Positions 5,317 to 58,138 of a stretch of 64,000 nt of DNA are shown piece after piece. The position numbers and the translations under genes are program-made. The notes beneath the pieces were generated by a model, which saw nothing but the letters and a program-made list of their open reading frames with translations, had not been told where the DNA came from and searched no databases. Where the stretch lies: the IMG/VR virus record IMGVR_UViG_3300047445_000186, positions 248,001 to 312,000 of that record; one strand, given 5' to 3'. Within the stretch, counting starts at the first letter, position 1. Every line of letters starts with the position of its first letter.

Positions 5317-5799
5317 TCAGCACTCCTGAGTTTCCTTGTAGTACTCATCCTCGATGAACGCGTGGTAATCGGCGAACGCGTCACCATCGACCTTGCGGTA
5401 CGTGTACCCGTTCAGCTTCCAGCGCTTTATGAACCTGTTGTACAGCTTCGCTCTGCTCGGGCCCTTTGTCTTGTCTGCTTCGAAGAACACGACTGATGGC
5501 TTGAGCATCTTGAGCGCATCCTCAAGGAATTTCTTCGCGGCTGCGAAGATCGCGAGCTGATCACCATCCCCCGTGGCGTCGTACGTTTCGCCATCTTCAT
5601 TGTAGCGATCGTCGTCCTCATCGTCCTCGCCATCGCCTAGTTGGACGAATGTGAAGTTCCATTTGCTGTCGTCCGGCCACCTGTCCATTCGAAATTCAAT
5701 CTCGCGGCCACCGAACTTGGCTCGAGCCCGGTAGGATTTCCCATTGTCTTTTACGACAGTGAGAGTGGTGTTCGTGTTCAGGATTTCGAAGATTTTCAT
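5317..5799 (-). CDS. Late hypothetical protein with MKIFEIL leader
   Basis: Minus strand TAAATA-GGAG-T-ATG directly upstream. Confidence 0.75.
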   Translation of the reverse strand: MKIFEILNTNTTLTVVKDNGKSYRARAKFGGREIEFRMDRWPDDSKWNFTFVQLGDGEDDEDDDRYNEDGETYDATGDGDQLAIFAAAKKFLEDALKMLKPSVVFFEADKTKGPSRAKLYNRFIKRWKLNGYTYRKVDGDAFADYHAFIEDEYYKETQEC

Positions 5800-5892
5800 A
5801 CTCCTATTTACGAGGTGTTCGTCCCGGTCCTGATTCGAGGACTCCAGTGCGGTGTATCTTTCTTACGATACACCCTCATCACTGGAGTTCAA

Positions 5893-7008
5893 ATGTTTCC
5901 CTCGATCGCAAAACTTGACGACTTGCTGCCGTTCGTTCAATCGAACAAGCAGATTCGCGTAAAGCCGTGCGACACGACTGGCCATACGGTCGTGTGCTAC
6001 ATGGTTCAAGACGAAGACACGTTCGACGGGGATCATCATGAATTCGCACGTGAATGCCGTGGTATCTCGTTCGACAAGAACGGCAAGATCAGCGCCCGCA
6101 CGATGCACAAGTTCTTCAACGTTGGCGAGCGTCCTGAAACGCAGCCTGACGTGATCAACTGGCGGGAAGTCACGCGGATCATGGAGAAGCGCGACGGCTC
6201 GATGGTAACACCTGTGTTACTCACCGAGAAGACCTTCAAGTTCAAGACGAAGAAGTCGTTCACGACTCCCGAAGCTGGACTGGCCGACTCGATCTGCCGT
6301 GAAGATCTGAACAAGTACCAGTGGGTGCTCCGGCTCCTGCAAGGCGGGTACACGCCGACTTTCGAGATCACTTCGCCACGGTTCCCGATCGTGGTCCGAT
6401 ACGAGAAGGACGAGCTCACGCTCCTGCATGTTCGCGAGAACGCGACTGGCCGGTACCTGTCGGCTGACGATCTGAAGTGGCTGCTTCCACCGTTCGCGCT
6501 TGTTCTCGATCACTCTGGCGAGTTCAAAGTGGACGGCGTTGTGAGCTGGGACAAGCTGAAGGTTGCGTCTGAAACGGCCGAAGGCATGGAAGGTTGGGTG
6601 ATCCAGTTCCGATCAGGCGAGATGGTGAAGCTGAAGACGAAGTGGTACATCGATTTGCATCACTCCGTGACGTTCACACGTTGGCGCGACATTGCTCGCA
6701 CCGTCTGTGCTGATCAGTCTGACGACTTGAAGGCTGCGTTCGCAATGGTTGGTCGCTCTGTCGAGCCGATCCTCCAGGTAGAGCGGAAGATCAAGTCTCG
6801 GATCGAGACTGTGGAACTGCTGGTGCGAGCATGTGTGCTGCACGCGAAAACGAACGGAATGTCGATCAAAGAAACGGCGCTGCACTTCAAGGAGAACGAG
6901 TTCTTCGGGCTGATCATGCGTTCGTTCCGTGATCAAGAAATCAACTGGGTAGAGTTCTACGAGAAGCACTACCTTGAACGAGACTTTGGATTGGAAGTTG
7001 TAGCATGA
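5893..7008 (+). CDS. rnlA: RNA ligase 1 (T4 Rnl1-like)
   Basis: KFFNVGE, motif I EKRDGS, TFE, EGWV..VKLKT; SD GGAG before ATG 5893. Confidence 0.92.
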   Translation: MFPSIAKLDDLLPFVQSNKQIRVKPCDTTGHTVVCYMVQDEDTFDGDHHEFARECRGISFDKNGKISARTMHKFFNVGERPETQPDVINWREVTRIMEKRDGSMVTPVLLTEKTFKFKTKKSFTTPEAGLADSICREDLNKYQWVLRLLQGGYTPTFEITSPRFPIVVRYEKDELTLLHVRENATGRYLSADDLKWLLPPFALVLDHSGEFKVDGVVSWDKLKVASETAEGMEGWVIQFRSGEMVKLKTKWYIDLHHSVTFTRWRDIARTVCADQSDDLKAAFAMVGRSVEPILQVERKIKSRIETVELLVRACVLHAKTNGMSIKETALHFKENEFFGLIMRSFRDQEINWVEFYEKHYLERDFGLEVVA

Positions 7009-20679: not shown

Positions 20680-20797
20680 TCCCGAAATCCGAGTGCACTC
20701 GGACTCCTCCGTGATTAAATAAGAACTGGTGCTGATGAGGCACCTTTTCTTTTACCTGCGAACAGTGGGTACCTATCACAACCTCGGAGTACGAGAC

Positions 20798-21613
20798 ATG
20801 TCAGACCGCACCACCATCGGTGATCGGATGAAGAGCTACGAAGCGCCTTCAACGACCCGCAAAGCTTTCAAGGGCCAGCCCCTCATTGTCCGCCTGGACG
20901 GAAGCTCATTCCACAAATTCACCAAGGGCATGAAGCGCCCATTCGATCTGGTTCTGAGCCAGCTCATGATCGACACCATGAAGTCCATGGTCGAGCGATA
21001 CAACGCGAACATCGGGTACACGCAATCGGACGAGATCACGCTCGCCTGGTACATGGAGCCATTCGAATCTCGCGAGCTCGAGTTCGGTGGCCGCTTCCAG
21101 AAGTTCGAAAGCGAACTTGCTGCATGGTGTTCTGTGAAGTTCAACTCGCTCCTTCGCGAAACCGAGTACGCCAAGAAGGCAGAGATGCTGCCGTACTTCG
21201 ATGCTCGCGCGTTCGTCGTGCCGAACTTGACCGAAGCGATGCACTGCTTCCTGTGGCGCCAGCAAGATTGCACGAAGAACGCGATCAGCATGGCCGCTCA
21301 GTCGATGTTCTCGCACAAGGAACTGCAAGGGAAACATGGGCCTGAGATGCAGGAGATGATGTTCCAGAAGTTCAACGTGAACTTCAACGACTACCCTTCG
21401 CACTTCAAGCGTGGCACGTTCGCTCGACGCGTGAAGCGCGAGTGGTTCCCGTCCGATGCAGAGATCGAAGCGATTCCGGAGAAATACCGGCCAAGTGGGC
21501 CAATCCTCCGCTCGTTCGTGCAGACCGAAGACATCTGGCTATCGAAGCAACCGAGCGGAACGCAAGCTCTGTTCGGTGACGCACCGATCGTTACAAATGT
21601 TACGGTGTCATGA
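20798..21613 (+). CDS. tRNA(His) guanylyltransferase Thg1-like protein
   Basis: RMKSYE, IVRLDGSSFHKF, YTQSDEITL, FDAR, WRQQDC..NAI. Confidence 0.92.
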   Translation: MSDRTTIGDRMKSYEAPSTTRKAFKGQPLIVRLDGSSFHKFTKGMKRPFDLVLSQLMIDTMKSMVERYNANIGYTQSDEITLAWYMEPFESRELEFGGRFQKFESELAAWCSVKFNSLLRETEYAKKAEMLPYFDARAFVVPNLTEAMHCFLWRQQDCTKNAISMAAQSMFSHKELQGKHGPEMQEMMFQKFNVNFNDYPSHFKRGTFARRVKREWFPSDAEIEAIPEKYRPSGPILRSFVQTEDIWLSKQPSGTQALFGDAPIVTNVTVS

Positions 21614-23733: not shown

Positions 23734-24371
23734 GTACCTTAGTTGGTTTGAGTGGCGCCCAGGGCGGTGGAAAGTCCAGTCTCCTGAAAGAGCTGGCAAA
23801 GCGGGGTTGGCACGTCGATGACTACCGAGTTAGTCGTGCAGTTCAAGATGCTTTGGGATGGGACTCCCTCGATCGAGTTCTAGATTCATTCGAGACGATG
23901 CAGTCCTTCCAAGAAGAAGTGTACAAGCAGAAGTTCAATCGTGAGATGTACTTGAAGCGCCAAGTCGGCGCGATTCTGACTGAGCGGACATTCGCTGATT
24001 TGGCCGCGTACACTCAGTCGTGGACATGGAAGTTCTTTCCTGTCGACTCGATGATTCCGCGCTCAGCACTTCGGTGGCTGACTGACTACATCAAGAACTG
24101 CCAGCTCGCGCAGAATGAACTGTACGATGGTGTGCTTCTTCTGCCACTCATGGATCATGTCGTATTCGAAGATGATCCGCATCGCGCAAAGAAGGAAGAC
24201 GCAGAGGAGGTGTACAACTTCATCGGGGCGCTTTCCGCAATGACTGACATGCCAAAATTGGTGATCACTCAAGAGTCGATCGAAGACCGCGCGACTGAAG
24301 TTGAAGACTTTTTGAAGGACAAGCTGAACACCGTGCTTGTTCGCAGACATTACAACTTGGAAGAAAACTGA
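23730..24371 (+). CDS. P-loop nucleotide kinase-like protein (dNMP kinase/AAA_28-like)
   Basis: GAQGGGKSS, LTERTFAD, FEDDPHR. Confidence 0.65.
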   Translation: MSTLVGLSGAQGGGKSSLLKELAKRGWHVDDYRVSRAVQDALGWDSLDRVLDSFETMQSFQEEVYKQKFNREMYLKRQVGAILTERTFADLAAYTQSWTWKFFPVDSMIPRSALRWLTDYIKNCQLAQNELYDGVLLLPLMDHVVFEDDPHRAKKEDAEEVYNFIGALSAMTDMPKLVITQESIEDRATEVEDFLKDKLNTVLVRRHYNLEEN

Positions 24372-24979
24372 TGGCATACGTTAAGGGGTATTCAAAGGCC
24401 CACCCAGGCTCGAAGGGCTTGCTCCTCGACTGGGAAACAACTGGATCGAATTTCGGCGGTGACAGCTCGATCGATTATCAGGGTATCACGTTCGGTGGTG
24501 TTGTGTTCGACACGACCACGTACGAAGAACTTGACTCGATCTACTGTGAACTGCAGTTCGACGACACGAAGTACAAGTGGACCGACGGCGCTGAGAAGAT
24601 TCACGGGAAATCGCGTGAATACCTTGCTGAGCATGGGATCCCTCGTGAAGAAGGTCTGGCGCAACTGCTTGAGCTCTTGCTGAAGCACTGGGCTCCAGGC
24701 TCGAAAATCCTGATGGCAGGTCACAACGTCGGATTCGACAACGACTTCACCGCTCAGCTCTTCCGCGATCACGACATGGAAGGCGAGTTCCGTCCTCATC
24801 ACGTGGTTGTTGACACGAGCGGTATTGCATTTGTTCTGACTGGCGAGTACAAGTCTGACATCGTGTTCGAGCTGCTTGGTGGTCTTGGCGAGCGCAAGGA
24901 GCATAACGCTCTTGAAGATGCTCGTGCAACTCTGGCTGTTCTTCGGAACGTGCGTCAGATTTTCGAAGGCAATCTGTGA
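24371..24979 (+). CDS. DEDDh 3'-5' exonuclease (DnaQ-like)
   Basis: LLDWETTG, GHNVGFD, VVDT, HNALEDA. Confidence 0.88.
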   Translation: MAYVKGYSKAHPGSKGLLLDWETTGSNFGGDSSIDYQGITFGGVVFDTTTYEELDSIYCELQFDDTKYKWTDGAEKIHGKSREYLAEHGIPREEGLAQLLELLLKHWAPGSKILMAGHNVGFDNDFTAQLFRDHDMEGEFRPHHVVVDTSGIAFVLTGEYKSDIVFELLGGLGERKEHNALEDARATLAVLRNVRQIFEGNL

Positions 24980-25155
24980 TCTCGTTCGATCGAACTGGGG
25001 AAACTTACATCCCCCTTCAATTGACTGGTGAGTTCCAGAAGGACTGTGATGTCACTCTGGAAACCAGGTATGGCAAGCGCCGCGTCGTCGTTCGCGATTG
25101 CAAGATCGTGTTCGAAGAGTATTTCAACAACAAACCAGAGAATTTTCCATCATGA
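24976..25155 (+). CDS. Small hypothetical protein (59 aa, not in track)
   Basis: GTGA and ATGA overlaps on both sides. Confidence 0.5.
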   Translation: MISFDRTGETYIPLQLTGEFQKDCDVTLETRYGKRRVVVRDCKIVFEEYFNNKPENFPS

Positions 25156-25520
25156 GCAGAAACGTTTACTACATTGATGTCGGCAATTACGGCCGAAAGC
25201 AAGTCGAAGAATACATCGCCGCGGTGCGTGAAGGAATCCAAAACCGAGAAGCACCTACTCTCGAAGAACTCGAGCGCAATGTGTGGGGTCCTGCTGATGA
25301 AGCTGAGCACGGCATCAAGCTCACGCCGAAGTCGCACAACATGTACGCGGGCGTGAACCTCGGTCCAGGTAGTGTGAACTACCGATTCACGTTCCTGATG
25401 CGTGAGCTCGAGAATCGCTTCCCGAATCCAGCACCGTACCGCTCTGATCGGATGCCAGAACAGGCATACCTCGAAGCGATCGACGCGCTCCTCGCTGACA
25501 CGTACAATCGAACCCGCTAA
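25152..25520 (+). CDS. Hypothetical protein with N-terminal T4 gp20 portal-like motif
   Basis: RNVYYIDVGNYGRKQVEEYIAAVREGIQNR. Confidence 0.65.
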   Translation: MSRNVYYIDVGNYGRKQVEEYIAAVREGIQNREAPTLEELERNVWGPADEAEHGIKLTPKSHNMYAGVNLGPGSVNYRFTFLMRELENRFPNPAPYRSDRMPEQAYLEAIDALLADTYNRTR

Positions 25521-25559
25521 AGTGCAACCCGAGTCTGACCACGTTCTTACAATGTGGTT

Positions 25560-25874
25560 ATGACTTGGAAACTCTTCCTCGACGACTTGAGAGCGCCGCC
25601 CGATCAAACTTGGGTGGTAGCTCGGTCCGTCCCTGCCGCGATTCTGTACATCACAGAGTACGGCTTCCCTTACGAGATGAGCCTTGATCACGATCTCGGC
25701 ACTGGAACAGATGCGCCGCAGCTTCTGCTCTGGATTCTCGAAGAGCTCATGGATGAGCACATCCACCCCTCAGCTTTGAAGGTCAAATTCGGCGTTCATT
25801 CGGCGAATCCTGTCGGGGCGCTCAATCTGAACAATCTCTGGAAACACATTCTCCGATATGACAACATTCTCTGA
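25560..25874 (+). CDS. Cyclic-phosphate-processing receiver-like domain protein
   Basis: KLFLDDLR.P, SLDHDLG, VHSANPVG; TACAAT-N6-ATG. Confidence 0.78.
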   Translation: MTWKLFLDDLRAPPDQTWVVARSVPAAILYITEYGFPYEMSLDHDLGTGTDAPQLLLWILEELMDEHIHPSALKVKFGVHSANPVGALNLNNLWKHILRYDNIL

Positions 25875-26724: not shown

Positions 26725-27900
26725 TTGAAACGATACACGACCCTTCAGTGCAACACTTGCTCCCGCAAGAAAGATGAACTAATCGATCTGACGCATTACG
26801 CGCCGGACCGATGCACAATCACGCTCGGCTGCGAAGGCCGTCTAACTCCTGTTGGGTACACCAGCGAAGGAAGCACCATTCTCGGTGTGCCTCCTGCTGG
26901 TCTCACGAACTGGGCTCCTCGCGGATCTACCGTCACTGGTACGGTAGCGCTGAAGGCCGACCCGATGTACGACACATCGACTGGAACCAAGAAGCAGATC
27001 GTTCTTGCTGTGGCGAACGACACACTCGGCTTCGTCCCATCTGACACCGCTGTCGTCACTCTGAATTTTGTCACTGAGCAACAGTCCGCAAAGGACTACC
27101 GCCAGTACACATACCGCCGCTCGAACTCGTTCACGATCGTGAACGGCATCGAAGACAATCAGGCCAAGAAGGTTCTGCGGTACAACATCTCTGGCGGGTC
27201 CGCCGATCAGGTCGATGTGTATGTGAACGGCGTGAAGCGCGAACGCGGCACAGCGGCAGATCAGTACCAGTTGTACGACGGTGTTGGCTCGGTGGTTCCG
27301 CCCAATTCTGTGTTGTTCAACACAACGATTACCGGTGGGTCCACTCAGGTGGACGTCGTGGTTTCTAAGGCAGCTGCAGTGTCGACTGCCTCTCTGAATT
27401 TCGTCCGAGCAATCGATGACGAAGCTCGTGTGAACACTGGTGCCTGGGAAGGCGTTCACTCAGTGAACTCTCCTGCGCATGGTGGTTTGTACTCGCTGTT
27501 CGTCTGCGATTTCTCTGAGAACCACGCGCTCGCTCTCGATGTGAAACTCCGTGTCGATCCCCAGATCCCATCGATCGTGGTTGATGTTCCAGGCGGTTCG
27601 CCGTTCATCATCACGAACGCAGCGATCCTGCTTTCACGCGCGAAGTCGTTCACTCAGATTGATCGTCAACGAGCAAAGTGGGTTCCACTTACGAAGCTGA
27701 ACTCTGAAACAGAGTACATGGTCGTGAAACTTGTTGATAACGCACGTGCACTGTTCATCACTGAAGCTTCGACTGTGAATCTTTTCCCAGTGATCGAAGC
27801 TGTTCGATTCGGTTCGCCAAAGCTGCAAACTCAAAATCTGCTTGGTGATCCTGATGCGGCCGAGTTGGACAACGATCTGATCTCTGGGCCTGACGCATGA
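26725..27900 (+). CDS. Late hypothetical protein, beta-rich, N-terminal Cys cluster (possible structural)
   Basis: TAAATA 26693; CNTC..CTITLGC. Confidence 0.65.
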   Translation: MKRYTTLQCNTCSRKKDELIDLTHYAPDRCTITLGCEGRLTPVGYTSEGSTILGVPPAGLTNWAPRGSTVTGTVALKADPMYDTSTGTKKQIVLAVANDTLGFVPSDTAVVTLNFVTEQQSAKDYRQYTYRRSNSFTIVNGIEDNQAKKVLRYNISGGSADQVDVYVNGVKRERGTAADQYQLYDGVGSVVPPNSVLFNTTITGGSTQVDVVVSKAAAVSTASLNFVRAIDDEARVNTGAWEGVHSVNSPAHGGLYSLFVCDFSENHALALDVKLRVDPQIPSIVVDVPGGSPFIITNAAILLSRAKSFTQIDRQRAKWVPLTKLNSETEYMVVKLVDNARALFITEASTVNLFPVIEAVRFGSPKLQTQNLLGDPDAAELDNDLISGPDA

Positions 27901-39209: not shown

Positions 39210-39279
39210 GGGCTTTAGAGTCATACTTCTCGCTGCTAAATAGTCCTCAGAGGGCCACGTCGTGGCCGCAGAGGACTCC

Positions 39280-40503
39280 ATGACATCTCCGGTCGATACA
39301 TCCGTCAAATCTTTCGATAGCACCATGCTCGGTGCTCCAGCCCTGAGTGGTACTGCTGGCACCACAATTGGCGTGCTTGATGCTTGCTTGGTGAACGGGT
39401 TCGACACACGTGCTGCTTCATCTATCGTTGTTTCAGGTGGTGTGGCTACGGTGAGCTACTCGGGTGCAGTGCACTCAGCTCGGTTGAACAGCGTTATTCT
39501 CGTGTCTGGCGTGACTGACATCACGTCGTTGAATGGTGAACAGAAGATCACGGCAGTCGGTTCTGGCTTCGTGAAGTTCGCGACAGCGGCCTCGCCAGGT
39601 ACCGCAACCGGCACGATCTCGTTTAAGATGGCTCCACTCGGATGGGTGAAGCCCTTCAATGGTACCAATATCGGCGTGTACCAGTCGAGTGACATCACGT
39701 CAACAAAGTGCTACCTTCGCGTTGACGATACTGGTACCCAGACATGCCGCGTTATGGGGTACGAAACCATGACTGACGTGAACACTGGACTTGGTGGATT
39801 CCCGCTGTCTGGTCAGATTCTTGGTCCTGTCACAGGTGGTGGTTGGTGGTACAAGAGCGCTCAGGTCAACTCGACCCCAGTTGTGTGGTCTATTCACGGT
39901 GACGGCAAGATCTTCTACATCAACATTCAGATGGGAACTAGCACGAACGCCTCGTATCAAATGACGTCTGGGCGTGTGTTCGGTGATCCAATTCCGTACA
40001 GACCTGGCGGCGATCCATACTGCTGCATTTTGAACTATGCCACTGCATCTGGTGGTATGGCCGGTGGTGTTGGAAATACGTACAGCTCATCTGCAAATTG
40101 CTCATTCGCGACACCTCGCGATTTCACTGGAATTGGATCCGCAGTTGGGAACTTCTTGATGCAGTTCGGAATCCCAGTAGGCTCTAACTCAAATTCAGGA
40201 ATTACGAACTTGGCTGGGGCATTCCCATCGTACATCGATGGAAGTCTTTGGTTGTTCCAGAAATTTCTTGCCGCAACTTCAACTGGCATGCCGCGGGCGC
40301 TCATGCCAGGTCTTTATATTTGCGGGCAGTCTAGCATCTATAACAACTTTAAGCAGGGCGATACGACCCCAGGCACAGGTGCTCTTGCTGGTCGATGGCT
40401 ACGTGCAGCAACGTCAAATGATGATGCAACCGTGCCGAACACGGCAAGCACAACGGCGAACACAGGTATCATTTTCTTTGATGACACTGGGCCGTGGAGA
40501 TAA
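39280..40503 (+). CDS. Tail-fibre-associated structural protein, paralog A1
   Basis: MTSPVDTSVK..LDACLVNG..APLGW..DDTGPWR; late promoter 39237. Confidence 0.75.
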   Translation: MTSPVDTSVKSFDSTMLGAPALSGTAGTTIGVLDACLVNGFDTRAASSIVVSGGVATVSYSGAVHSARLNSVILVSGVTDITSLNGEQKITAVGSGFVKFATAASPGTATGTISFKMAPLGWVKPFNGTNIGVYQSSDITSTKCYLRVDDTGTQTCRVMGYETMTDVNTGLGGFPLSGQILGPVTGGGWWYKSAQVNSTPVVWSIHGDGKIFYINIQMGTSTNASYQMTSGRVFGDPIPYRPGGDPYCCILNYATASGGMAGGVGNTYSSSANCSFATPRDFTGIGSAVGNFLMQFGIPVGSNSNSGITNLAGAFPSYIDGSLWLFQKFLAATSTGMPRALMPGLYICGQSSIYNNFKQGDTTPGTGALAGRWLRAATSNDDATVPNTASTTANTGIIFFDDTGPWR

Positions 40504-40506
40504 ACA

Positions 40507-42720
40507 ATGGCTGCGCATCGATACTGGCGCATCACTGGTCTTGAGGCCTTTGCAGGTGCAGATCTTGAACTGAGTGAATTTCAGCTCCTGAACGGTGCCA
40601 CTCGCGTTGATGCGTCTGCAACGCTCACATGCTCAAACTCACCAGCAATTGGCGCAGTTGCGAACATCCAAGATAACAATCTGAGCACGTCTGCGTACTG
40701 GCAAAAGGCATCTCTTGTCGGGCTTACGCTGAACTGGGACTTTGGTGGATCGCCGACTCAGGTGAATGATATTCGGATTGCTGGTGGTGACAGCGCACTG
40801 ACGTTCCCGCTGTATGCTCGGCTAGAGTACTCGGACGATAACGTTGCGTGGATCGTGCAGTACACGTACGGTGGTATCACCTGGCCAGGCCCGCGCACGC
40901 TGACTTCATCTGGGACATTCTTGACTAATGGCGGGGTATGCACCTGCTTGTTGCACTTCGACGGTGTGAACGGTGCTACCACAACAACTGACAGCAGCTC
41001 AATCGGGGCGACCGTCACGTTCAACGCGATGGCAATTTCCACGACCTTGTCGATCTATGGTGGCTCTTCACTGTCTCAAACTGGAGCTCGCGGGTACATT
41101 AGTCTACCAGCTAATACTGCGTACGTGCCAGCGGGCGATTTCTGTATCCAGGGCTGGTTCCGAAATGCTGCAGCGGGTGGCGGCAGTACCCTTGTTTTGT
41201 ACGTCAAGGGATCAATTTCGGTCTATTCTTACTTGGTATTTGTGAATGGCAACGGGTATCTGCAGGCCAACATCTTCGGCACCGGCGGCAGCGTTGCGCT
41301 GCTCGCCCCTTCACTATGGGCAACAAATACCTGGTGTCATGTTGCGGTGACTAGACAAGGTAACGTTTTTAGACTGTTCGTGAATGGTTTAATTGTAAGC
41401 ATAATCACGGCGCCGAGTTCATTTGGCGCCTTAGTCGCTAGCGCAGGTCCCCTCAGTCTCGCTAATGACACGGCGGGGACATATGGTTGGGGCGCTGTTC
41501 CTGGCTATATCGACGAATTTCAAATCATTAATGGCGCGGCAATTTACACGCAGGCCTTTACTCCGCCAGCCGCCCCCTCAACTGCTACCGCAATTGACCA
41601 AGTTCAAGGTATTCTTCAGAACCTCGGCGGTGGCCGCGTAGCGAGCGGGAACAATCTCGTTCTCCCAAGCGTGATTGGGAGTTCCCTGGCGTCATATGGC
41701 GCGAGCAGTCAACCGCCGAGCGCGTTCATTCGTGGTCGAAGAGACTACGTGTACAACGCGAATGGATACCAAGGTCTCATTGACGGGATCGTCGATTACA
41801 AGGCGACCCCGTTTAATGTGCCTGTCTCGCGGCGCGTCCGGCTTCACCGACAGGCAGATGGTTTGTTGATCCGCGAAGTGTTCAGTGATCCAATCACTGG
41901 CGAGTACAAGTTTGATTACATTGACGAGACACAGAAATACTTTGTGTGCAGTCTCGATCACACTGGCGCTTTCCGTGCCGTGATCAGCGATAATCTGACA
42001 CCGACAATTATGAGTGGTGCACCGATCGCGTATCCACCTGCGCACTACAGAAGCGTCGGTCCTGTGGCAACGTACCAGGCCGGGCCGGGCACTACAGTTG
42101 TCCCTAGCACTCCTACTGGGATGACTGTTGGTGATCTCATGATTGCCAGCATTGCGAACATGATCTGTACCGTGACGCCTCCAGTAGGATGGACATTGGT
42201 GAATTCGTACAGCATGAATAATGGCGCAAACACCCAACAGGTTATGCTAAGTGTGTACAGCAAGTATGCGACCTCTGCAGACGTTGCTATTGCGGCGCAT
42301 ACTTTCAGTTTCAGCGCCACGAGTACACAGGGCGCAACTGGAGTTATCACCGCGTTCTACAACCCAGCAGGGCTTCCAGTTGTTGTTGACACGTCTGCAG
42401 TGAACGGGTATTTGGTCGGGAATGCATCCACCCCACCACAGCAGTCGCAGACGATGATTTTCACGCCAATGCGAGTAACGAACAATAATTCGCACATCAT
42501 GCTCGTTACCGCTCAAGCGTTCATGGGTACAACGTTCAATGCAGGCACAGGTCTGATTCTCAGAGCAGGAAGTACAGCAGGCGGGATCGGTGTCTGCACA
42601 GGTACCAGCAATCTGCAAAGCGGGTATGAGAACGGCGTTGGGTACAATGGGTACATGATGACATGGAATAACGTCGCGACGCAGCCGGCGATCGGCATTG
42701 GTCTGATTTTGACGACATAA
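40507..42720 (+). CDS. Tail fibre / receptor-binding protein B1 with LamG-like domain
   Basis: MAAHRYWR start; WCHVAVTRQGNVFRLFVNG..GYIDE. Confidence 0.75.
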   Translation: MAAHRYWRITGLEAFAGADLELSEFQLLNGATRVDASATLTCSNSPAIGAVANIQDNNLSTSAYWQKASLVGLTLNWDFGGSPTQVNDIRIAGGDSALTFPLYARLEYSDDNVAWIVQYTYGGITWPGPRTLTSSGTFLTNGGVCTCLLHFDGVNGATTTTDSSSIGATVTFNAMAISTTLSIYGGSSLSQTGARGYISLPANTAYVPAGDFCIQGWFRNAAAGGGSTLVLYVKGSISVYSYLVFVNGNGYLQANIFGTGGSVALLAPSLWATNTWCHVAVTRQGNVFRLFVNGLIVSIITAPSSFGALVASAGPLSLANDTAGTYGWGAVPGYIDEFQIINGAAIYTQAFTPPAAPSTATAIDQVQGILQNLGGGRVASGNNLVLPSVIGSSLASYGASSQPPSAFIRGRRDYVYNANGYQGLIDGIVDYKATPFNVPVSRRVRLHRQADGLLIREVFSDPITGEYKFDYIDETQKYFVCSLDHTGAFRAVISDNLTPTIMSGAPIAYPPAHYRSVGPVATYQAGPGTTVVPSTPTGMTVGDLMIASIANMICTVTPPVGWTLVNSYSMNNGANTQQVMLSVYSKYATSADVAIAAHTFSFSATSTQGATGVITAFYNPAGLPVVVDTSAVNGYLVGNASTPPQQSQTMIFTPMRVTNNNSHIMLVTAQAFMGTTFNAGTGLILRAGSTAGGIGVCTGTSNLQSGYENGVGYNGYMMTWNNVATQPAIGIGLILTT

Positions 42721-42769: not shown

Positions 42770-43975
42770 ATGACATCTCCAGTAGATACATCCGTAAAAT
42801 CATTCGACTACTCAATGTTGGGAGCGGCTGCCCTGAGCGGCACGGTCGGCTCGTTGTTGCCAATTCTTGACCAATGCCTGGTGAATGGGTTTGACACTCG
42901 AGCAGCGTCAAGCATTGTCGTTTTTGGCGGGATCGCGACAGTAAGCTACACCGGCATTACGCACTCTGCGCGTTTGAACTCGGTTATTCTCGTGACTGGT
43001 GTGACTGACCTTACGGCCCTGAACGGAGAACAGAAGGTCACCGCCGTCGGCTTCGGTTTCATTAAGTTCGCAACCAGTGTTGCGAACGGTACCGCGACCG
43101 GTACGATCTCGTTCAAGATGGCTCCACTTGGATGGGCGATTGCGCAGACAGGTACTAATCTTCGCGCGTACAAATCGACCGATGTTACATCGACCGGCTG
43201 CATTCTTCGTGTCGACGACACCGTTGCCACGTCGTGCCGTGTCGTTGGATACGAAAGTATGACCGACATCAATACTGGTCTTGGCGCATTCCCGACTGCT
43301 TCGCAACAGCCTGGCGGCGGGTACTGGGTGAAGAGCATTACGGCCTCGGCGGGTACTGTCCTCTGGTCTATCCATGGGGATGGGAAGGTGTTCTACCTGA
43401 ATGTTCAGCCTGGTAGCGTTTCTGGCGCAGGTTTTCAGATCACTTCTAATCGTATGTTCGGAGACATTATTCCGTTCAAACCGGGTGGTGATCCTTATGC
43501 GTGCGTAATGAACTACTCGATCACGTCAACGATTGGCGCGATGCACGACGCCGGTGTTGGTGGGTCGGCTGTCACTCAGTTCGCTCAACCACGCGACTTC
43601 ACGGGGCTTGGATCAGCGGTGATCTCGTTTATCTACCCGTACAACGGCACGACTCTGAACACAATTTCCGGCATTACCTCGATTGCAGGTCCATTCCCAT
43701 CTCAGGTAGATGGTGGCATTTGGTTGAGCTCAAAGTATCTGAACACCACCACCAGCGTTGGCATGCGTGGTCAGCTTCCAGGCGTATTGCACTGTGGTCA
43801 GAGCGGGGTATGGGCCTCGTTTAAAATGGGTGACACGACGCCCGGCTCTGGCCCCCTCGCCGGGCGTTCGCTGCGCGCTACAACAGCAGGGCACGATACG
43901 ACAGGTAGTAACACCACCTCGTCAACTGCAAACACCGGGATCATGTTCTTCGACGACACTGGGCCTTGGCGATAA
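42770..43975 (+). CDS. Tail-fibre-associated structural protein, paralog A2
   Basis: Colinear with A1; late promoter 42730. Confidence 0.75.
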   Translation: MTSPVDTSVKSFDYSMLGAAALSGTVGSLLPILDQCLVNGFDTRAASSIVVFGGIATVSYTGITHSARLNSVILVTGVTDLTALNGEQKVTAVGFGFIKFATSVANGTATGTISFKMAPLGWAIAQTGTNLRAYKSTDVTSTGCILRVDDTVATSCRVVGYESMTDINTGLGAFPTASQQPGGGYWVKSITASAGTVLWSIHGDGKVFYLNVQPGSVSGAGFQITSNRMFGDIIPFKPGGDPYACVMNYSITSTIGAMHDAGVGGSAVTQFAQPRDFTGLGSAVISFIYPYNGTTLNTISGITSIAGPFPSQVDGGIWLSSKYLNTTTSVGMRGQLPGVLHCGQSGVWASFKMGDTTPGSGPLAGRSLRATTAGHDTTGSNTTSSTANTGIMFFDDTGPWR

Positions 43976-43978
43976 GCA

Positions 43979-46900
43979 ATGGCTACGCACAGATATTGGC
44001 GCGCTAAAAATCTTCAGGCGTACGGCGCAACCGGCCTAGACATCACTGAGTACCAGCTTTTTGTTGGCAGCACACGTGTTGACGGCCCGGCGACGCTCAC
44101 CTCCAACATCGCGCCATCAACTGGTTCATTGTCATATCTGCAGGACGGGCTAGCTACGAACAGCGCAATCTGGCTAGCAGCTGATGTTCCCAAACTCGTG
44201 CTCTCGTGGGACTTTGGTTCGACATCCGGTAACTGGGTTGATGTGAATGACATTCAGCTCGGTGGTGGCGCGCTTCGGCAGAATTTTCTGGCGTTCTCCA
44301 CTCTTCAGTACTCGGATGATGCCAGCACTTGGACAGATGCATTCATTAGCACTACGAACGGCTATGTTGCGGGTGCGTACGCGTGGCCTGGAAGTTTTAC
44401 GGCCACCACGAGTAGACCATTCTCGTACAATAGTCTGACAGTGTTGCTTCACGGTGATGGTACTGACGGTGGGACCACGTTCACGGATAGCTCAACGAAC
44501 GCATTCACGGTCACCCCCACAGCTACAACAACAAGTGCAACGCAGAAAAAGTTTGGTACGACTGCGCTTTCGTTCAATGGCGCGACCTGTAAGCTGTTGA
44601 TCGCGCACAACAATGCGTTGGTTCCGAGTGGAGATTTCTGCATTCAGTGTTACGTATGGGTTGCTTCTGCGACGGCTGCGACTCATCGATTCATCGTGAA
44701 CAAATCGATCTCAAGTGGAGTCTGTCCATACGCATTTGCTGTGATGTCGACAGGTGTGTTGTCTGCTAATTCATACAACGCGGCTGGCACGTCGATGGTG
44801 AACTTCACCGCGACTCAGTTAATCACAGCTCAGACTTGGACACACGTAGCGTTCACACGTCAGGGCTTGATTTACCGTATTTTCATGAATGGTCAAATCG
44901 TTGCGCAGGCAACGGCGCCATCAACTGGCGCGCTGTACAACAACAATACGCACCCGATGTGTATTGGGAACGTGTCAGACAGCATTTACCCTATGTTTGG
45001 AACAGGTGGTACCGGGTACATTGACGAGTTCTCATTTGATGCGAACAACGCTGTGTACACTGCGCCATTCATTCCACCTGCGGCTCCAGGCTCAGGTGGT
45101 GGAATCGTGCTTACGAACAATTTCGCGATCTCATCTCCGACTGAGCCGTCTACGGTAGGAAATGGTGTATCATCGTATGGCGTATCAGCGGTGTCAATTG
45201 CGCCGGAAACGGTCGCAGATGTTATCGCCATGTCAGCGCCAACAGTGTACGGTGTAGCTCCACCTCCAGTTTTCTTTGGTGTCAGCACGACATTGATGCT
45301 CTCATATGGTGCTGGACTGCGAGCGCCTAATAACACGCGTGGTCGAAATGATTTCGTCACTGGTGTTCTCGGCTCTGGCGTCGGACGAATCGACGGTGTT
45401 GTGCAAGTTCCTGGTACGCCAAATCAGCCAGTGAAGCGTCGTGTTCGTCTGTACAGGCAAGAAGACGGATACCTTGTGCGCGAGGCCTGGAGTGATTCAA
45501 GCACTGGGGCGTTCTCATTTGACTACGTTGACGAGAAACAGCTGTACTACATCTGCGCATTTGACCACACGAATGCGTTCGTTGGGCTGATCGCTGACAA
45601 CTTAACGCCATCCCTGCTTGAAACTTCTACTGTTGACGCATACGCAGGTGCTCTGAAGAGACTGATCACGATCACTGGCGCAGGTGGTGCAGGTACAGGA
45701 TACGCTATGTTGTTCAAGATTGGGGAGAGCAGCGGTTCTGCCGGCTCCGATTTCAACCTTGAAGCTGTTACAACGACGTTCCCACTTGATAAGAACATCC
45801 CTGGCGATGTGCAGTTCACTGACGTCAGTGGAAGCCCGCTTCCACAGTGGGTCGAGCAAGTCACCGGGACGGCACCGAATCGTGTTGCATGGTTCTGGGT
45901 TAAAGTTTCGGCCGATCTGAGTACAACGCAGTCGATTTACTGCACGTACCGGAATGGTATGAGCACCGCAAGCAATGGCAATACCGTGTTCCTGTTGTTC
46001 GATGACTTCGATGACGGCACGCTCGATACTGGAAAGTGGTCGAACGTCACTGGATCAGGCAGTTATGTAATCTCCGGTTCTGAATTCGTACTCACCGGTA
46101 CTGGTGTTGGTCGCGCGCTTTATTCGGCCACGACGTTCGGTGATGGAATGGAAGTGGTTGGTAAGGTCGGACCATCGGCTACCTCGCTGAGCTACAACGG
46201 TAAGTTCGGTTTCGAAACGCAGTACATCTTCCAAAATGACTGGGACAGCCAAGGATCATCGGAAGTTGTAGTTGGCCCATCGACTAAGACACAACTTGAC
46301 GCGCGCTATCAGACCACGTATTACAGAATGCGAATCCGGCGTGCGGGTGGCGCAGGTAGCATGTTGGTCAATGACGTGGTGAAGCATACACAAGGTTCTG
46401 GGATTGGGACTTCATCTGTGCCAGTTTGGCTGATGAACGTGTATGACGCCACTGTTGCCGGTAAGGTTGATTGGATCGCAGTCAAGAAGTACATGCTCAC
46501 CGAGCCTACGTACTACTCGGCCGACACCTCCATTCCTGCGGCGACTACCGTGATCAACATGACTTTCGATACCGGGAACGGTTCGACTACGTTCACGGAT
46601 ACTGGTTCACAAGCATCAAGTTGGCAGATCGGTACGGGCGCGGTTCAGTGTTCGACGACAGCGGTTCTTGAAGGCGTTTCATCGCTCTTTGTTCCTGGTG
46701 GTGGCTTCGCCTATCTGTACACTACAGCGTACTCCGCGAACATGCTTCCAGCTACCTCAGACTTCTCGCTGAAATTCAAGGCGCGTTCGTCGTCATGGCT
46801 GCGCTTTGACGCTTCTGGGTGCTATTTGATCTCGATTCAGGGCGCGGTAGGAAATGGAGCAGACACGCAATTCGCGATCGCAACGAATCTGAATACATAT

Positions 46901-47170
46901 CTGGCATTCGCGTATAGTGACGGCACGACGCGTTCAGCAGTGACTGGGACTACTCCTGTCCCGGTGAATGTGACCGTGTCATTCGAGTTCAAGCGAGTAG
47001 GCAGTACACTCTCATTGCTGATGAACGGCGTGCTTCAATGTTCTGCTACTCTGTCTGGCGCGTTGAACGTGCCGTCTGGTCAGCAGTGGCGAATCGGTGC
47101 ACCGGCCGGTGCACAAGGCGGTGCATTTAACGGGATGTATTTCGACTCGCTCTCGCTTACTGTTGGTTAA
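43979..47170 (+). CDS. Tail fibre / receptor-binding protein B2 with LamG-like and DUF2341-like domains
   Basis: MATHRYWR start; WTHVAFTRQG; DVQFTD..LPQWVE..AWFWVKV..IYCTY. Confidence 0.75.
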   Translation: MATHRYWRAKNLQAYGATGLDITEYQLFVGSTRVDGPATLTSNIAPSTGSLSYLQDGLATNSAIWLAADVPKLVLSWDFGSTSGNWVDVNDIQLGGGALRQNFLAFSTLQYSDDASTWTDAFISTTNGYVAGAYAWPGSFTATTSRPFSYNSLTVLLHGDGTDGGTTFTDSSTNAFTVTPTATTTSATQKKFGTTALSFNGATCKLLIAHNNALVPSGDFCIQCYVWVASATAATHRFIVNKSISSGVCPYAFAVMSTGVLSANSYNAAGTSMVNFTATQLITAQTWTHVAFTRQGLIYRIFMNGQIVAQATAPSTGALYNNNTHPMCIGNVSDSIYPMFGTGGTGYIDEFSFDANNAVYTAPFIPPAAPGSGGGIVLTNNFAISSPTEPSTVGNGVSSYGVSAVSIAPETVADVIAMSAPTVYGVAPPPVFFGVSTTLMLSYGAGLRAPNNTRGRNDFVTGVLGSGVGRIDGVVQVPGTPNQPVKRRVRLYRQEDGYLVREAWSDSSTGAFSFDYVDEKQLYYICAFDHTNAFVGLIADNLTPSLLETSTVDAYAGALKRLITITGAGGAGTGYAMLFKIGESSGSAGSDFNLEAVTTTFPLDKNIPGDVQFTDVSGSPLPQWVEQVTGTAPNRVAWFWVKVSADLSTTQSIYCTYRNGMSTASNGNTVFLLFDDFDDGTLDTGKWSNVTGSGSYVISGSEFVLTGTGVGRALYSATTFGDGMEVVGKVGPSATSLSYNGKFGFETQYIFQNDWDSQGSSEVVVGPSTKTQLDARYQTTYYRMRIRRAGGAGSMLVNDVVKHTQGSGIGTSSVPVWLMNVYDATVAGKVDWIAVKKYMLTEPTYYSADTSIPAATTVINMTFDTGNGSTTFTDTGSQASSWQIGTGAVQCSTTAVLEGVSSLFVPGGGFAYLYTTAYSANMLPATSDFSLKFKARSSSWLRFDASGCYLISIQGAVGNGADTQFAIATNLNTYLAFAYSDGTTRSAVTGTTPVPVNVTVSFEFKRVGSTLSLLMNGVLQCSATLSGALNVPSGQQWRIGAPAGAQGGAFNGMYFDSLSLTVG

Positions 47171-56935: not shown

Positions 56936-58138
56936 ATGACATCTCCAGTCGATACCTCAGTTAAGTATTTCAGCTCGAATATGCCGAACGCTCCAGTGCT
57001 GAGCGGCACTGCCGGCGCGCTGATTGCATTGCTGGACGCTTGTCTCAAGGACGGCTTCAACTCGATTACACCGACATCGATTGTGGTCGCTGGAGGTATC
57101 GCTACTTTGAGCTGGGCCTCTGGTACGTTCGCGGCACTGCCAGACTCGGTAGTGCTGATTGCTGGCGTGACCGACAAGACCGGCCTGAACGGTGAGCAGA
57201 AAGTGCTCACCAAGAGCGCGCTGTCAATCACGTTCGCAACTGCTGAGACTGCTGGCACTGCAACGCTCTCCGCTGCCACGGTGAAGATCGCGCCGCTTGG
57301 ATGGCTGAAGCCTCAATCAGGTACCAACCTTGCAGCGTACCAATCAAGTGATTCACTGTCTACCAAGATGCTACTGCGTGTTGATGACACCGGAACCACG
57401 ATGGCCCGCGTTGTCGGATACGAGTCCATGACCGATGTGAACACTGGAGTGAACCCATTCCCTTCAGCGGCTCAGATGTCAGGTGGCGGTTATTGGTCGA
57501 AGAGCGTGAATGCGAGCGCCGCTACCGTGAATTGGTCCTTGCATGGCGATGGAAGAATCTTCTATCTTAACGTTCAGCCAGGATCGTCGAACGCTTTGGT
57601 GAATCAAATTTGTTCAGGCAAGGTCTTTGGAGACGTGATTCCGACCAAGCCGGGCGGAGACCCTTATGCCTGCTGCCTGAACTACGCCCAGACCGCAACG
57701 ATTGGTAACCAGACCGATGGCGCGTTCGGCGCGTCTGGCGACTTCAAGTTCGCCATGCCTCGCGATTTCACAGGATTGGGGTCTTCAGTGATGTACGGCG
57801 CGTGGACTTTGACTGGAAATGGCGGAGTTTCAGGTCTAGCGAACGCCCTTGGCTCGTTCCCTTCCCCAATTGACGGCGGCCTTTGGCTGTGCAAGAAGTT
57901 CCTGTACACTTCTATTCTCAGTTCCCCTCGTGCCATTTTCCCAGGCCTCCTGAACGTCGTCCAGTCTGGCGTTTGGAATTCCTTCAAGCAAGGAGACTCA
58001 GTGCCGGGGTCTGGGATTTACGCGGGTAAGAACCTGATGGCGGCAACGACATCTGACAACTCGACGGCGTTCACCACAGCTTCTACTGCAGCTAACACTG
58101 GCATCATCTTTTTCGACGTCACAGGCCCTTGGAGATAA
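56936..58138 (+). CDS. Tail-fibre-associated structural protein, paralog A3
   Basis: MTSPVDTSVK..FDVTGPWR, colinear with A1/A2. Confidence 0.75.
   Translation: MTSPVDTSVKYFSSNMPNAPVLSGTAGALIALLDACLKDGFNSITPTSIVVAGGIATLSWASGTFAALPDSVVLIAGVTDKTGLNGEQKVLTKSALSITFATAETAGTATLSAATVKIAPLGWLKPQSGTNLAAYQSSDSLSTKMLLRVDDTGTTMARVVGYESMTDVNTGVNPFPSAAQMSGGGYWSKSVNASAATVNWSLHGDGRIFYLNVQPGSSNALVNQICSGKVFGDVIPTKPGGDPYACCLNYAQTATIGNQTDGAFGASGDFKFAMPRDFTGLGSSVMYGAWTLTGNGGVSGLANALGSFPSPIDGGLWLCKKFLYTSILSSPRAIFPGLLNVVQSGVWNSFKQGDSVPGSGIYAGKNLMAATTSDNSTAFTTASTAANTGIIFFDVTGPWR

What the first reader, a model, noticed from the sequence alone, without database searches (positions are those of the whole stretch)
25152..25520. 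Stand-alone protein beginning with a portal-protein motif: possible decoy
RNVYYIDVGNYGRKQVEEYIAAVREGIQNR resembles the conserved T4-family gp20 segment recalled as RRIFYIDVGNLPK.KAEQY...RNK, but the protein is 122 aa, lies among metabolism genes and the rest is unrelated. Known: Avs4-type STAND receptors sense portals. Inference: decoy for portal sensors, or packaging modulator.
Basis: partly seen in the sequence, partly recalled or inferred. Interest (0 to 1): 0.68.

Follow-up and report, generated by a model that had tools for sequence, protein, structure and literature searches.

The report
Small phage protein with portal-clip fragment
A 122-residue accessory protein of an uncultured jumbo phage starts with a 39-residue copy of the portal protein segment where the DNA-packaging motor and the neck dock. 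This segment is fused to an undescribed helix-loop-helix module, so the protein may be a natural soluble mimic of that docking site, but no function has been shown.

Summary
Window 25152-25520 (+) is an intact 122-aa gene in a replication/nucleotide-metabolism block of a 331.8-kb uncultured jumbo phage related to Ralstonia phage RsoM2USA.

Residues 3-41 match the most conserved portal motif. Pfam Portal_T4 and phrog_213 hits are sub-threshold (E 1.4e-3 and 3.9e-4). A profile of this phage clade's portals gives 28-32 bits. It is the only hit among 1,209 six-frame segments of the window (E 4.6e-8), and 20,000 shuffles reach 11.2 bits at most.

The segment aligns to T4 gp20 residues 282-311, the first clip strand, the tip and helix alpha6. 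This is the published docking site of terminase gp17 and neck protein gp13. A synthetic peptide of gp20 288-311 is reported to bind gp17 and block packaging.

The rest is not portal-like. Residues 70-122 belong to an unnamed helix-loop-helix module found in about 50 clusters from uncultured phages, with variable flanks. No other member is portal-like.

Best reading (about 0.35): a soluble clip mimic that binds a clip partner and modulates packaging or neck attachment. Against it, the tip M-P is Y-G, the helix has lost its positive charge, and only one lineage carries the gene. An Avs4-decoy role is untested and less likely. The phage's own portal and terminase could not be retrieved.

The parts
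25152..25520 (+). Intact gene for the 122-aa chimeric protein (P0001), stop codon included
   Evidence: ORF listing and sequence. The same product is called on 8 metagenome contigs, 100% identical.
25158..25274 (+). Residues 3-41: portal-clip-like segment, equivalent to T4 gp20 282-311 plus a few residues (clip strand, tip, helix alpha6)
   Evidence: Portal_T4 and phrog_213 sub-threshold hits. Clade portal HMM 28-32 bits, unique in the window and in the background, and far above shuffles. BLASTP to T4 gp20 282-311. AF2 predicts a helix at 15-31.
25275..25358 (+). Residues 42-69: low-confidence linker with one short predicted helix (37-44)
   Evidence: AF2 pLDDT 50-58. Weak similarity to RsoM2USA_440 and to a HEAT-repeat protein also extends into this stretch.
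25359..25517 (+). Residues 70-122: conserved helix-loop-helix module (GPGxxxxRF..L..ELE.RFP.P.P..S...PE..YL.AID.L)
   Evidence: Exhaustive phmmer found 50 cluster representatives, E down to 4e-8. Alignment A2 has invariant G, R, P and E. AF2 pLDDT 93-98, helices 75-89 and 102-121. No Pfam or PHROG family. 12 of 48 members weakly hit NCBIfam NF052258.
24976..25155 (+). Upstream 59-aa ORF. Its GTG start overlaps the exonuclease stop (GTGA) and its stop overlaps the target's start (ATGA), which suggests translational coupling.
   Evidence: No family hit. Not called by JGI in L001-L004, but partly called in L005.
24371..24979 (+). RNase T-like 3'-5' exonuclease, the conserved left border of the variable islet (matches RsoM2USA_458)
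   Evidence: PF00929 and phrog_192. 44.7% identity to RsoM2USA 326,899-327,483.
25554..25874 (+). cREC_REC receiver-like gene, an islet neighbour
   Evidence: PF20274 E 4.7e-19, phrog_1479.
26725..27900 (+). 391-aa gene, the conserved right border of the islet (matches RsoM2USA_456)
   Evidence: tblastn to RsoM2USA 325,987-326,439, E 2e-9.

Best explanation
Shown: this is a real, lineage-specific accessory gene of a jumbo phage, and its product is a chimera. Residues 3-41 derive from, or closely imitate, the portal clip element (first clip strand, tip turn, helix alpha6). Residues 70-122 are a helix-loop-helix module shared by many small proteins of uncultured phages.

Inferred mechanism: the module is a common handle, probably for dimerisation or docking. 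The N-terminal clip-like piece is the specificity part. Presented free in the cytoplasm, it would occupy the site on a clip-binding partner that normally receives the portal. The partner would be the large terminase, or the gp13-like neck adaptor, whose C-terminal arm inserts between adjacent alpha6 helices.

The expected effect is to delay or block docking of the packaging motor or neck. The target could be a co-infecting competitor or satellite, or the phage's own motor until proheads are ready.

The identity of the parts is well supported (about 0.85). The mimic mechanism is inference (about 0.35).
For: - Portal similarity is specific and well above chance.
- It maps to T4 gp20 282-311.
- The clip is exposed and binds gp17 and then gp13. 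N291, M292, R295 and K296 contact gp17. A gp20 288-311 peptide binds gp17 and inhibits packaging (PMC4493910).
- The gp13 arm inserts between alpha6 helices and contacts the clip strand, mainly through hydrophobic contacts (PMC12929587).
- The residues kept in the target are the strand (R3, V5, Y7, I8, D9, V10, G11, N12) and the hydrophobic face of the helix (V18, Y21, V25, I29), plus P35.
- The gene sits in a variable islet between two genes conserved with RsoM2USA. RsoM2USA annotates a single 135-aa gene in that interval, and none of the islet ORFs found a credible match in the RsoM2USA DNA held. Accessory genes in such regions are thought to mostly antagonise host defences or other viruses (bioRxiv 10.1101/2023.04.06.535777).
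- The stop/start overlaps indicate an expressed operon.
- The module family has variable flanks around a constant core.
Against: - No binding has been shown. The homodimer prediction gave no verdict.
- Portal-invariant positions have changed: tip M-P to Y-G, R4N, F6Y, K19E, E23A, N27E and R33E.
- Counted from the sequences, the net charge of the helix is 0, against about +4 in portals. The basic residues are the ones reported to contact gp17, gp13 and gp14.
- Only one lineage carries the gene, and all copies are identical, so selection cannot be measured.
- No other family member has a portal-like part.
- Residues 9-53 also resemble RsoM2USA_440, an unrelated-looking small ORFan. Residues 14-60 resemble a HEAT-type repeat. 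The helix part of the match is therefore not uniquely portal-like.
- An isolated strand plus helix may not fold as it does in the portal.
Confidence: 0.35

Rival explanations
1. Exapted or relic fragment. Illegitimate recombination once copied a piece of a portal gene into an accessory gene. The piece now serves only as an N-terminal extension, or as nothing. The protein's function lies in the helix-loop-helix module and has nothing to do with packaging.
For: - The module is the only part conserved across about 50 clusters, and it occurs with any kind of flank.
- Portal-invariant surface and tip residues are lost.
- The N-terminal part has low to moderate model confidence.
- Phage accessory regions are mosaics.
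Against: - At about 38% identity, the segment keeps the strand and the hydrophobic helix positions in exact register over 39 residues. This is not expected after long neutral drift.
- The ORF starts exactly at the motif and is intact.
- This reading names no mechanism.
Confidence: 0.33
2. Immune decoy or shield. The clip-like piece occupies portal-sensing receptors such as Avs4 without activating them. Alternatively, it binds the terminase and masks it from the terminase sensors Avs1-3.
For: - Avs1-3 and Avs4 are activated by terminases and portals respectively (PMC11897194).
- The gene lies in an accessory islet.
- The replication-block location suggests expression before the late structural genes. 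This timing is inferred.
Against: - Only 39 of about 550 portal residues are present.
- From my recollection of Gao et al. 2022, which could not be read here, Avs4 recognises the portal fold broadly.
- There are no PADLOC hits and no known anti-defence relatives.
- The family does not generally carry structural-protein-like parts.
- The host and its defence repertoire are unknown.
Confidence: 0.1
3. Chance resemblance. The N-terminus is an unrelated strand-helix that happens to match the portal motif. Its true kin may be small proteins such as RsoM2USA_440.
For: - Curated-library hits are below threshold.
- No portal reached E 1e-3 in the 1.8-billion-protein search.
- There is a reciprocal weak match to RsoM2USA_440 over residues 9-53.
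- There is a HEAT-like match over residues 14-60.
- The finding was selected from a large scan.
Against: - The clade portal profile gives 28-32 bits, against a maximum of 11.2 in 20,000 shuffles and 7.9 in 453 kaa of background.
- The strand-turn alone (residues 1-13) contributes 14.7 bits. Neither the RsoM2USA_440 match (residues 9-53) nor the HEAT-like match (residues 14-60) covers residues 3-8, the core of the strand. RsoM2USA_440 itself scores -0.2 bits on the portal HMM.
- All 40 listed tblastn hits fall in portal genes.
Confidence: 0.12

Closest known systems
T4-type portal protein gp20 (Pfam PF07230 Portal_T4, phrog_213), clip domain residues 279-358
   Same: Residues 3-32 align without gaps to gp20 282-311, and residues 3-41 to positions 247-285 of a clade portal HMM. 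The order of strand, turn and helix is the same, and the strand and hydrophobic helix residues are conserved.
   Different: The protein has 122 aa, against 520-575. It has no wing, stem, crown or rest of the clip, so it cannot form a portal ring. It scores below the Pfam cut-off, is encoded outside the head module, and has changed tip and basic residues.
Synthetic gp20 peptide 288-311, which binds terminase gp17 and inhibits T4 DNA packaging (Lin, Rao & Black 1999, as cited in PMC4493910)
   Same: It covers the same stretch of the portal, free of the ring. This is direct precedent that the isolated element can bind the motor and block packaging.
   Different: This protein is a natural gene product, only about 33% identical to the T4 stretch, and fused to a helix-loop-helix module. 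Binding is untested, and the M292 and R295/K296 equivalents are not conserved in register.
Unnamed phage helix-loop-helix module (alignment A2); distant NCBIfam NF052258 'SGM_3592 family protein'
   Same: Residues 70-122 carry all invariant and nearly invariant positions of the module and are 39-52% identical to the other members.
   Different: P0001 itself does not hit NF052258, and 12 of 48 members do so only weakly. The function of both families is unknown. P0001 is the only member with a portal-like flank.
Packaging-interference proteins of satellites and phages, for example SaPI Ppi, which binds the small terminase (from my own knowledge, not checked here)
   Same: The proposed logic is the same: a small protein binds a packaging component and diverts or blocks packaging.
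   Different: There is no sequence or fold relation. Those proteins are not fragments of the portal. The mechanism here is only inferred.

Membership tests
T4-type portal protein (PF07230 / phrog_213) | Score at or above the curated Pfam gathering threshold | tested here: not met
   17.9 bits against a cut-off of 22.9.
T4-type portal protein (PF07230 / phrog_213) | Full architecture of wing, stem, clip and crown, about 500-575 aa | tested here: not met
   The protein has 122 aa. Only HMM positions 247-285 of a full-length portal profile align. Domain limits are from PMC4493910.
T4-type portal protein (PF07230 / phrog_213) | Conserved clip motif R-R-V-F-Y-[IV]-D-x-G-N-M-P followed by helix alpha6 | tested here: inconclusive
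   R3, V5, Y7, I8, D9, V10, G11 and N12 and the helix hydrophobic positions are kept. R4N, F6Y, M13Y, P14G, K19E and R33E have changed.
T4-type portal protein (PF07230 / phrog_213) | Encoded in the head module, next to the prohead protease, scaffold and major capsid protein | tested here: not met
   The neighbours are an exonuclease, cREC_REC, NUDIX and DNA polymerase. True portals of relatives sit next to Peptidase_S77 and Gp23.
Unnamed helix-loop-helix module family (alignment A2) | Invariant G, R, P and E, and the R-F-P-x-P-x-P loop between two helices | tested here: met
   G73, R78, P91 and E103 are present, with 39-52% identity to the other members.
Unnamed helix-loop-helix module family (alignment A2) | Confident helix-loop-helix fold | tested here: met
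   pLDDT 93-98 for residues 70-122, with helices 75-89 and 102-121. Only generic bHLH-like matches, Z at most 4.9.
NCBIfam NF052258 SGM_3592 family | Score at or above the curated cut-off (70 bits) | tested here: not met
   P0001 gives no hit at E up to 1. 12 of 48 module members hit weakly, best E 8e-4.
Portal-clip peptide inhibitors of packaging (gp20 288-311 peptide) | Contains the equivalent of gp20 288-311 | tested here: met
   Residues 9-32 align to gp20 288-311 within the ungapped 3-32 / 282-311 alignment.
Portal-clip peptide inhibitors of packaging (gp20 288-311 peptide) | Terminase-contact residues N291, M292, R295 and K296 conserved | tested here: inconclusive
   N12 is kept and M is replaced by Y. 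A basic pair, R15-K16, is present but shifted by one position. The helix net charge is 0, against about +4.
Portal-clip peptide inhibitors of packaging (gp20 288-311 peptide) | Binds the large terminase and inhibits packaging | not testable with these tools
   The phage's own terminase could not be retrieved.
Decoy for portal-sensing STAND receptors (Avs4) | Carries the portal surface that the receptor recognises and blocks activation | not testable with these tools
   The structure paper is not held. Only 39 of about 550 portal residues are present. There is no PADLOC hit.

The most novel reading that the evidence does not exclude
The phage has turned a fragment of a portal gene into a weapon or regulator. 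The protein would be a soluble clip mimic, displayed on an oligomerising helix-loop-helix handle. It would capture the large terminase or the neck adaptor and so block packaging or head completion of competing phages or satellites, or hide the terminase or portal signal from Avs-type sensors. More widely, the unnamed module family would be a scaffold on which phages mount different short bait peptides.
Probability: 0.25. Interest if true: 0.8.

Novelty: new variant of a known kind. Interest (0 to 1): 0.5.

Why it matters
If the clip-like piece is functional, this would be the first natural counterpart of the synthetic portal peptide that blocks T4 packaging. It would show a phage reusing a fragment of its own essential machine as a soluble competitor. 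That bears on three topics: phage-phage and phage-satellite competition, control of terminase activity before proheads exist, and the recently found immune sensors that read portals and terminases. It would also give a function to a widespread but unnamed small module of uncultured phages. If it is not functional, it remains a clear example of how mosaic accessory genes pick up pieces of core genes.

Tried and rejected
1. The phage's own portal and terminase were not obtained.
- The portal of RsoM2USA (L014:7102-8823) was found. Its 120 best homologues include none from the 331,776-bp contig. P0070 and P0071 are from other phages.
- A contig walk from the window end (L180, L302, L303, L306, L307) reached tail and baseplate genes and SbcCD, but no portal. 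Synteny with RsoM2USA breaks there.
- T4 gp17 finds nothing in the DNA held.

2. Complex prediction of the protein as a homodimer gave no verdict (0.31, mark 0.42). This is neither support nor evidence against.

3. Fold searches of the AF2 model gave nothing specific. Foldseek against PDB and BFVD found nothing at E up to 1e-3. VIA-align gave only generic helix-loop-helix matches, Z at most 4.9.

4. PDB sequence search with the protein found nothing relevant.

5. The idea that the match extends through the whole clip, suggested by a BLASTP alignment to the P-TIM68 portal over residues 3-86, is rejected. The full portal HMM stops at residue 41, and residues 68-116 belong to another family.

6. 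The idea that the C-terminal module derives from the portal stem is rejected. No family member hits the portal HMM.

7. A link of the module to type I HsdR (EcoR124I 745-773, E 0.018) has no support from Pfam scans of 48 members and is left open.

8. A profile search of the 5.8-billion-protein set with A1 was swamped by word selection and was uninformative.

9. The module and RsoM2USA_440 have no relatives among 50,697 cultured phage records.

10. Nucleotide comparison of 5 of the contigs shows no change inside the ORF, so there is no test of selection.

11. The promoter and terminator scan showed nothing notable.

Full report
**The gene**

The same product is called on 8 metagenome contigs (JGI and Logan), the longest 331,776 bp. 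The ORF sequence in the five loci fetched is identical to the window's.

Its start overlaps the stop of a 59-codon ORF (ATGA). That ORF's GTG start overlaps the stop of the upstream exonuclease gene (GTGA). This is a layout typical of translationally coupled phage operons. GC and GC3 match the neighbours.

**The genome**

The window has no nucleotide-level relative among 50,697 phage records. Its family B DNA polymerase is 46.8% identical to that of Ralstonia jumbo phage RsoM2USA (343.8 kb). Xanthomonas XacN1 and Xoo-sp13 and other jumbo phages follow.

The window carries:
- replication and nucleotide-metabolism genes (polymerase, primase, DnaB-like helicase, clamp-like protein, 5'-3' exonuclease, RNA ligase, Thg1-like enzyme, NUDIX, RNase T-like exonuclease);
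- repeated tail-fibre-like cassettes.

It is colinear, inverted, with RsoM2USA 301-338 kb. The exonuclease (24371-24979) and the 391-aa gene (26725-27900) match RsoM2USA_458 and _456. RsoM2USA annotates a single 135-aa gene between them. None of the ORFs between the two window genes (the 59-aa ORF, the target, cREC_REC, a 62-aa ORF, NUDIX, an 81-aa ORF) found a credible match in the RsoM2USA DNA held. The target therefore lies in a variable accessory islet.

**Is the portal resemblance real?**

Curated libraries give sub-threshold hits to the same place:
- Portal_T4 PF07230: E 1.4e-3, 17.9 bits (cut-off 22.9), residues 2-34.
- phrog_213 portal protein: E 3.9e-4.
- tblastn against phages gave 182 weak hits. 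All 40 listed fall in portal genes.
- Two unrelated portals (P-TIM68, pf16), searched against the six frames of the window, find this ORF as their best hit (E 0.003-0.007).

I located the RsoM2USA portal (L014:7102-8823) and collected 120 relatives. Their motif, RRVFYIDVGNMPxQRVKQYLExIKNxIRQKRxPT, aligns without gaps to residues 3-36 (38% identity).

An HMM of a 70-residue stretch around the motif, built from 116 portals, gave these results:
- It scores the ORF at 28-30 bits. This is the only hit among 1,209 six-frame segments of the window (E 4.6e-8; next best E 0.63).
- It is the only hit in 453,505 aa of non-portal six-frame background from this phage and relatives (next best 7.9 bits).
- 20,000 shuffles of residues 1-45 reach at most 11.2 bits, against 31.9 for the real sequence.
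- Residues 1-13 alone give 14.7 bits and residues 13-45 give 9.1 bits.

A full-length portal HMM aligns residues 3-41 only (22.3 bits). I conclude that the similarity is real at the profile level and confined to 39 residues. It is too short to reach significance in a 1.8-billion-protein search, where no portal appeared at E up to 1e-3.

**Which part of the portal is it?**

BLASTP places residues 3-32 on T4 gp20 residues 282-311. According to Sun et al. 2015 (PMC4493910):
- The clip domain is residues 279-358, made of three strands and helix alpha6, exposed outside the capsid.
- It is the attachment site of the packaging ATPase gp17 and later of the neck protein gp13.
- The tip residues N291, M292, R295 and K296 probably contact gp17, and their mutation abolishes packaging.
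- A 24-residue peptide of gp20 288-311 binds gp17 and inhibits packaging (their reference 34, Lin, Rao & Black 1999).

PMC12929587 shows the gp13 C-terminal arm inserting between alpha6 helices of adjacent subunits. It makes hydrophobic contacts with both helices and the clip strand, and salt bridges to R295 and K296.

So the ORF's N-terminus corresponds to the clip strand, tip and alpha6, the docking element. The AF2 model has a helix at 15-31 (pLDDT about 75), consistent with alpha6.

**How faithful is the copy?**

- Kept: R3, V5, Y7, I8, D9, V10, G11, N12, V18, Y21, V25, I29 and P35. These are the strand, the turn and the hydrophobic face of the helix.
- Changed at positions that are 91-100% conserved in portals: R4N, F6Y, M13Y, P14G, K19E, L22I, E23A, N27E, Q31N, K32R and R33E.
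- Counted from the sequences, the helix net charge is about 0, against about +4 in the clade consensus.
- A basic pair, R15-K16, is present, one position off the T4 R295-K296 register.

**The rest of the protein**

The exhaustive phmmer search found 50 cluster representatives that match only residues about 68-116 (E down to 4e-8, 45-62% identity). They are 63-441 aa long, with unrelated flanks on either side. One of them, P0006, has two copies of the module.

The trimmed alignment A2 gives the consensus GPGTPxxRFxxLMxELEKRFPxPxPFxSxxxPExxYLxAIDxL, with invariant G, R, P and E.

- AF2 models it as helix-loop-helix with pLDDT 93-98.
- Structure searches return only generic bHLH-type shapes, Z at most 4.9.
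- It is not in Pfam or PHROGs.
- It was not detected by tblastn, with P0001 or a representative module as query, in 50,697 cultured phage records.
- The three relatives' contigs inspected look like phage DNA, with the gene among many small ORFs without Pfam hits.
- 12 of 48 members weakly hit NCBIfam NF052258 'SGM_3592 family protein', which is uncharacterised. No literature was found.
- The profile weakly matches EcoR124I HsdR 745-773 (ELEQRFPDP, E 0.018).
- No family member other than P0001 hits the portal HMM, and none shows another structural-protein-like part.

**Caveats on the N-terminal region**

- Residues 14-60 also align to HEAT-like repeats of a 556-aa protein, P0045.
- Residues 9-53 show a weak reciprocal match to RsoM2USA_440, a 108-aa ORFan (pairwise E 2e-6; E 0.0025-0.004 at window or genome scale).
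- RsoM2USA_440 is not itself portal-like (-0.2 bits).
- The helix and linker are therefore not uniquely portal-like. The strand-turn is.

**Interpretation**

The parts are well established: a portal-clip-derived N-terminal element fused to a widespread module. For mechanism I commit, at about 0.35, to a soluble clip mimic that binds a clip partner (large terminase or neck adaptor) and so modulates or blocks packaging or neck attachment. The arguments for this are:
- the published peptide precedent;
- the retention of the strand and of the hydrophobic helix face that the adaptor arm contacts;
- the accessory-islet location. Accessory genes in such regions are thought to mostly antagonise defences or other viruses (bioRxiv 10.1101/2023.04.06.535777).

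Nearly as likely (0.33) is that the fragment is a relic or a mere extension, and that the function lies in the module. An immune-decoy or shield role (Avs4, Avs1-3; PMC11897194) is possible but unsupported (0.10). Pure chance is unlikely given the profile statistics (0.12).

**Not achieved**

- The phage's own portal and terminase were not retrieved, despite homology searches, pattern scans and a 50-kb contig walk. I therefore could not compare the copy with its presumed source or co-fold it with a cognate partner.
- The single complex job (homodimer) gave no verdict.

**Verdict**

'Packaging modulator' is now a precise, testable hypothesis. 'Decoy' remains open.
- Novelty: a new variant of a known kind, namely a natural fragment-type mimic of a structural protein, with an undescribed partner module.
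- Interest is moderate (0.5), because only one lineage carries the gene and no function is shown.

Noticed in passing
window 25359-25517, and P0002-P0051 (alignment A2): An unnamed helix-loop-helix module of about 50 aa (GPGTPxxRFxxLMxELEKRFPxPxPFxSxxxPExxYLxAIDxL) occurs in about 50 clusters from uncultured phage contigs, with variable flanks. P0006 has two copies. It is absent from Pfam, PHROGs and cultured phage records. 12 of 48 members weakly hit NCBIfam NF052258 (SGM_3592 family).
   Followed up: partly
alignment A2 versus PDB 2w00 and others (EcoR124I HsdR residues 745-773): The module profile matches 'TGEAKRGFMTVVSELEQRFPDPTSIESEK' in the type I restriction subunit HsdR at E 0.018. This may be chance. 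Pfam scans of the members gave no supporting family.
   Followed up: partly
window 24976-25155 (+): A 59-codon ORF bridges the exonuclease gene and the target, with GTGA and ATGA start/stop overlaps. It has no family hit and is not called in most public annotations of this contig.
   Followed up: partly
window 25554-25874 (+); also L008:3457-3792: A cREC_REC (PF20274, cyclic-phosphate processing receiver) gene sits directly downstream of the target, beside a NUDIX gene. A cREC_REC gene also lies about 4.5 kb from the module-family gene P0002 on another phage contig.
   Followed up: no
window 39262-40503, 42770-43975, 56936-58138 (+), with 40507-42720 and 43979-47170: Three paralogous genes of about 400 aa (phrog_9998 / phrog_9600 'tail assembly protein') were seen. 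Two of them alternate with large fibre- or baseplate-wedge-like genes (737 and 1063 aa), which looks like duplicated fibre-plus-chaperone cassettes.
   Followed up: no
window 20729-21613 and 5641-7008 (+): A Thg1-like tRNA-His guanylyltransferase and an RNA ligase are present. This is an RNA-repair flavour shared with cREC_REC.
   Followed up: no
P0084, P0096, P0105, P0106, P0148, P0151, P0159: Several portals of the RsoM2USA clade are 920-977 aa long and carry an intein (PF14890). In the five seen aligned to the target (P0096, P0105, P0106, P0148, P0151, P0159 except P0084), the clip motif is at the usual position, so the intein is inserted downstream of it.
   Followed up: no
L100:11603-11926 (-) = RsoM2USA_440, versus window 25176-25310: A 108-aa RsoM2USA ORFan has a weak reciprocal-best match to residues 9-53 of the target (31% identity; shared G.Y.RK..EE, APT.E and W.P.D..H). 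It is not itself portal-like. The relation is unresolved.
   Followed up: partly
L180, L302, L303 (contigs Ga0495677_0000003 and Ga0495656_0000007 beyond the window end): Synteny with RsoM2USA breaks about 2 kb past the window end. The order jumps from the equivalent of 300 kb to 284-282 kb, then to 229-250 kb (2960-aa and 1601-aa giant genes, baseplate genes, SbcCD). The 331,776-bp contig ends there while the 234,547-bp contig continues, so the two contigs are differently permuted pieces of one genome.
   Followed up: partly
RsoM2USA MG752970.1 321,631-324,603: The DNA polymerase region of RsoM2USA is annotated as two 'hypothetical protein' features. The window's single 934-aa polymerase aligns across both (99% coverage). 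This may be a split or mis-annotated gene in the public record.
   Followed up: no
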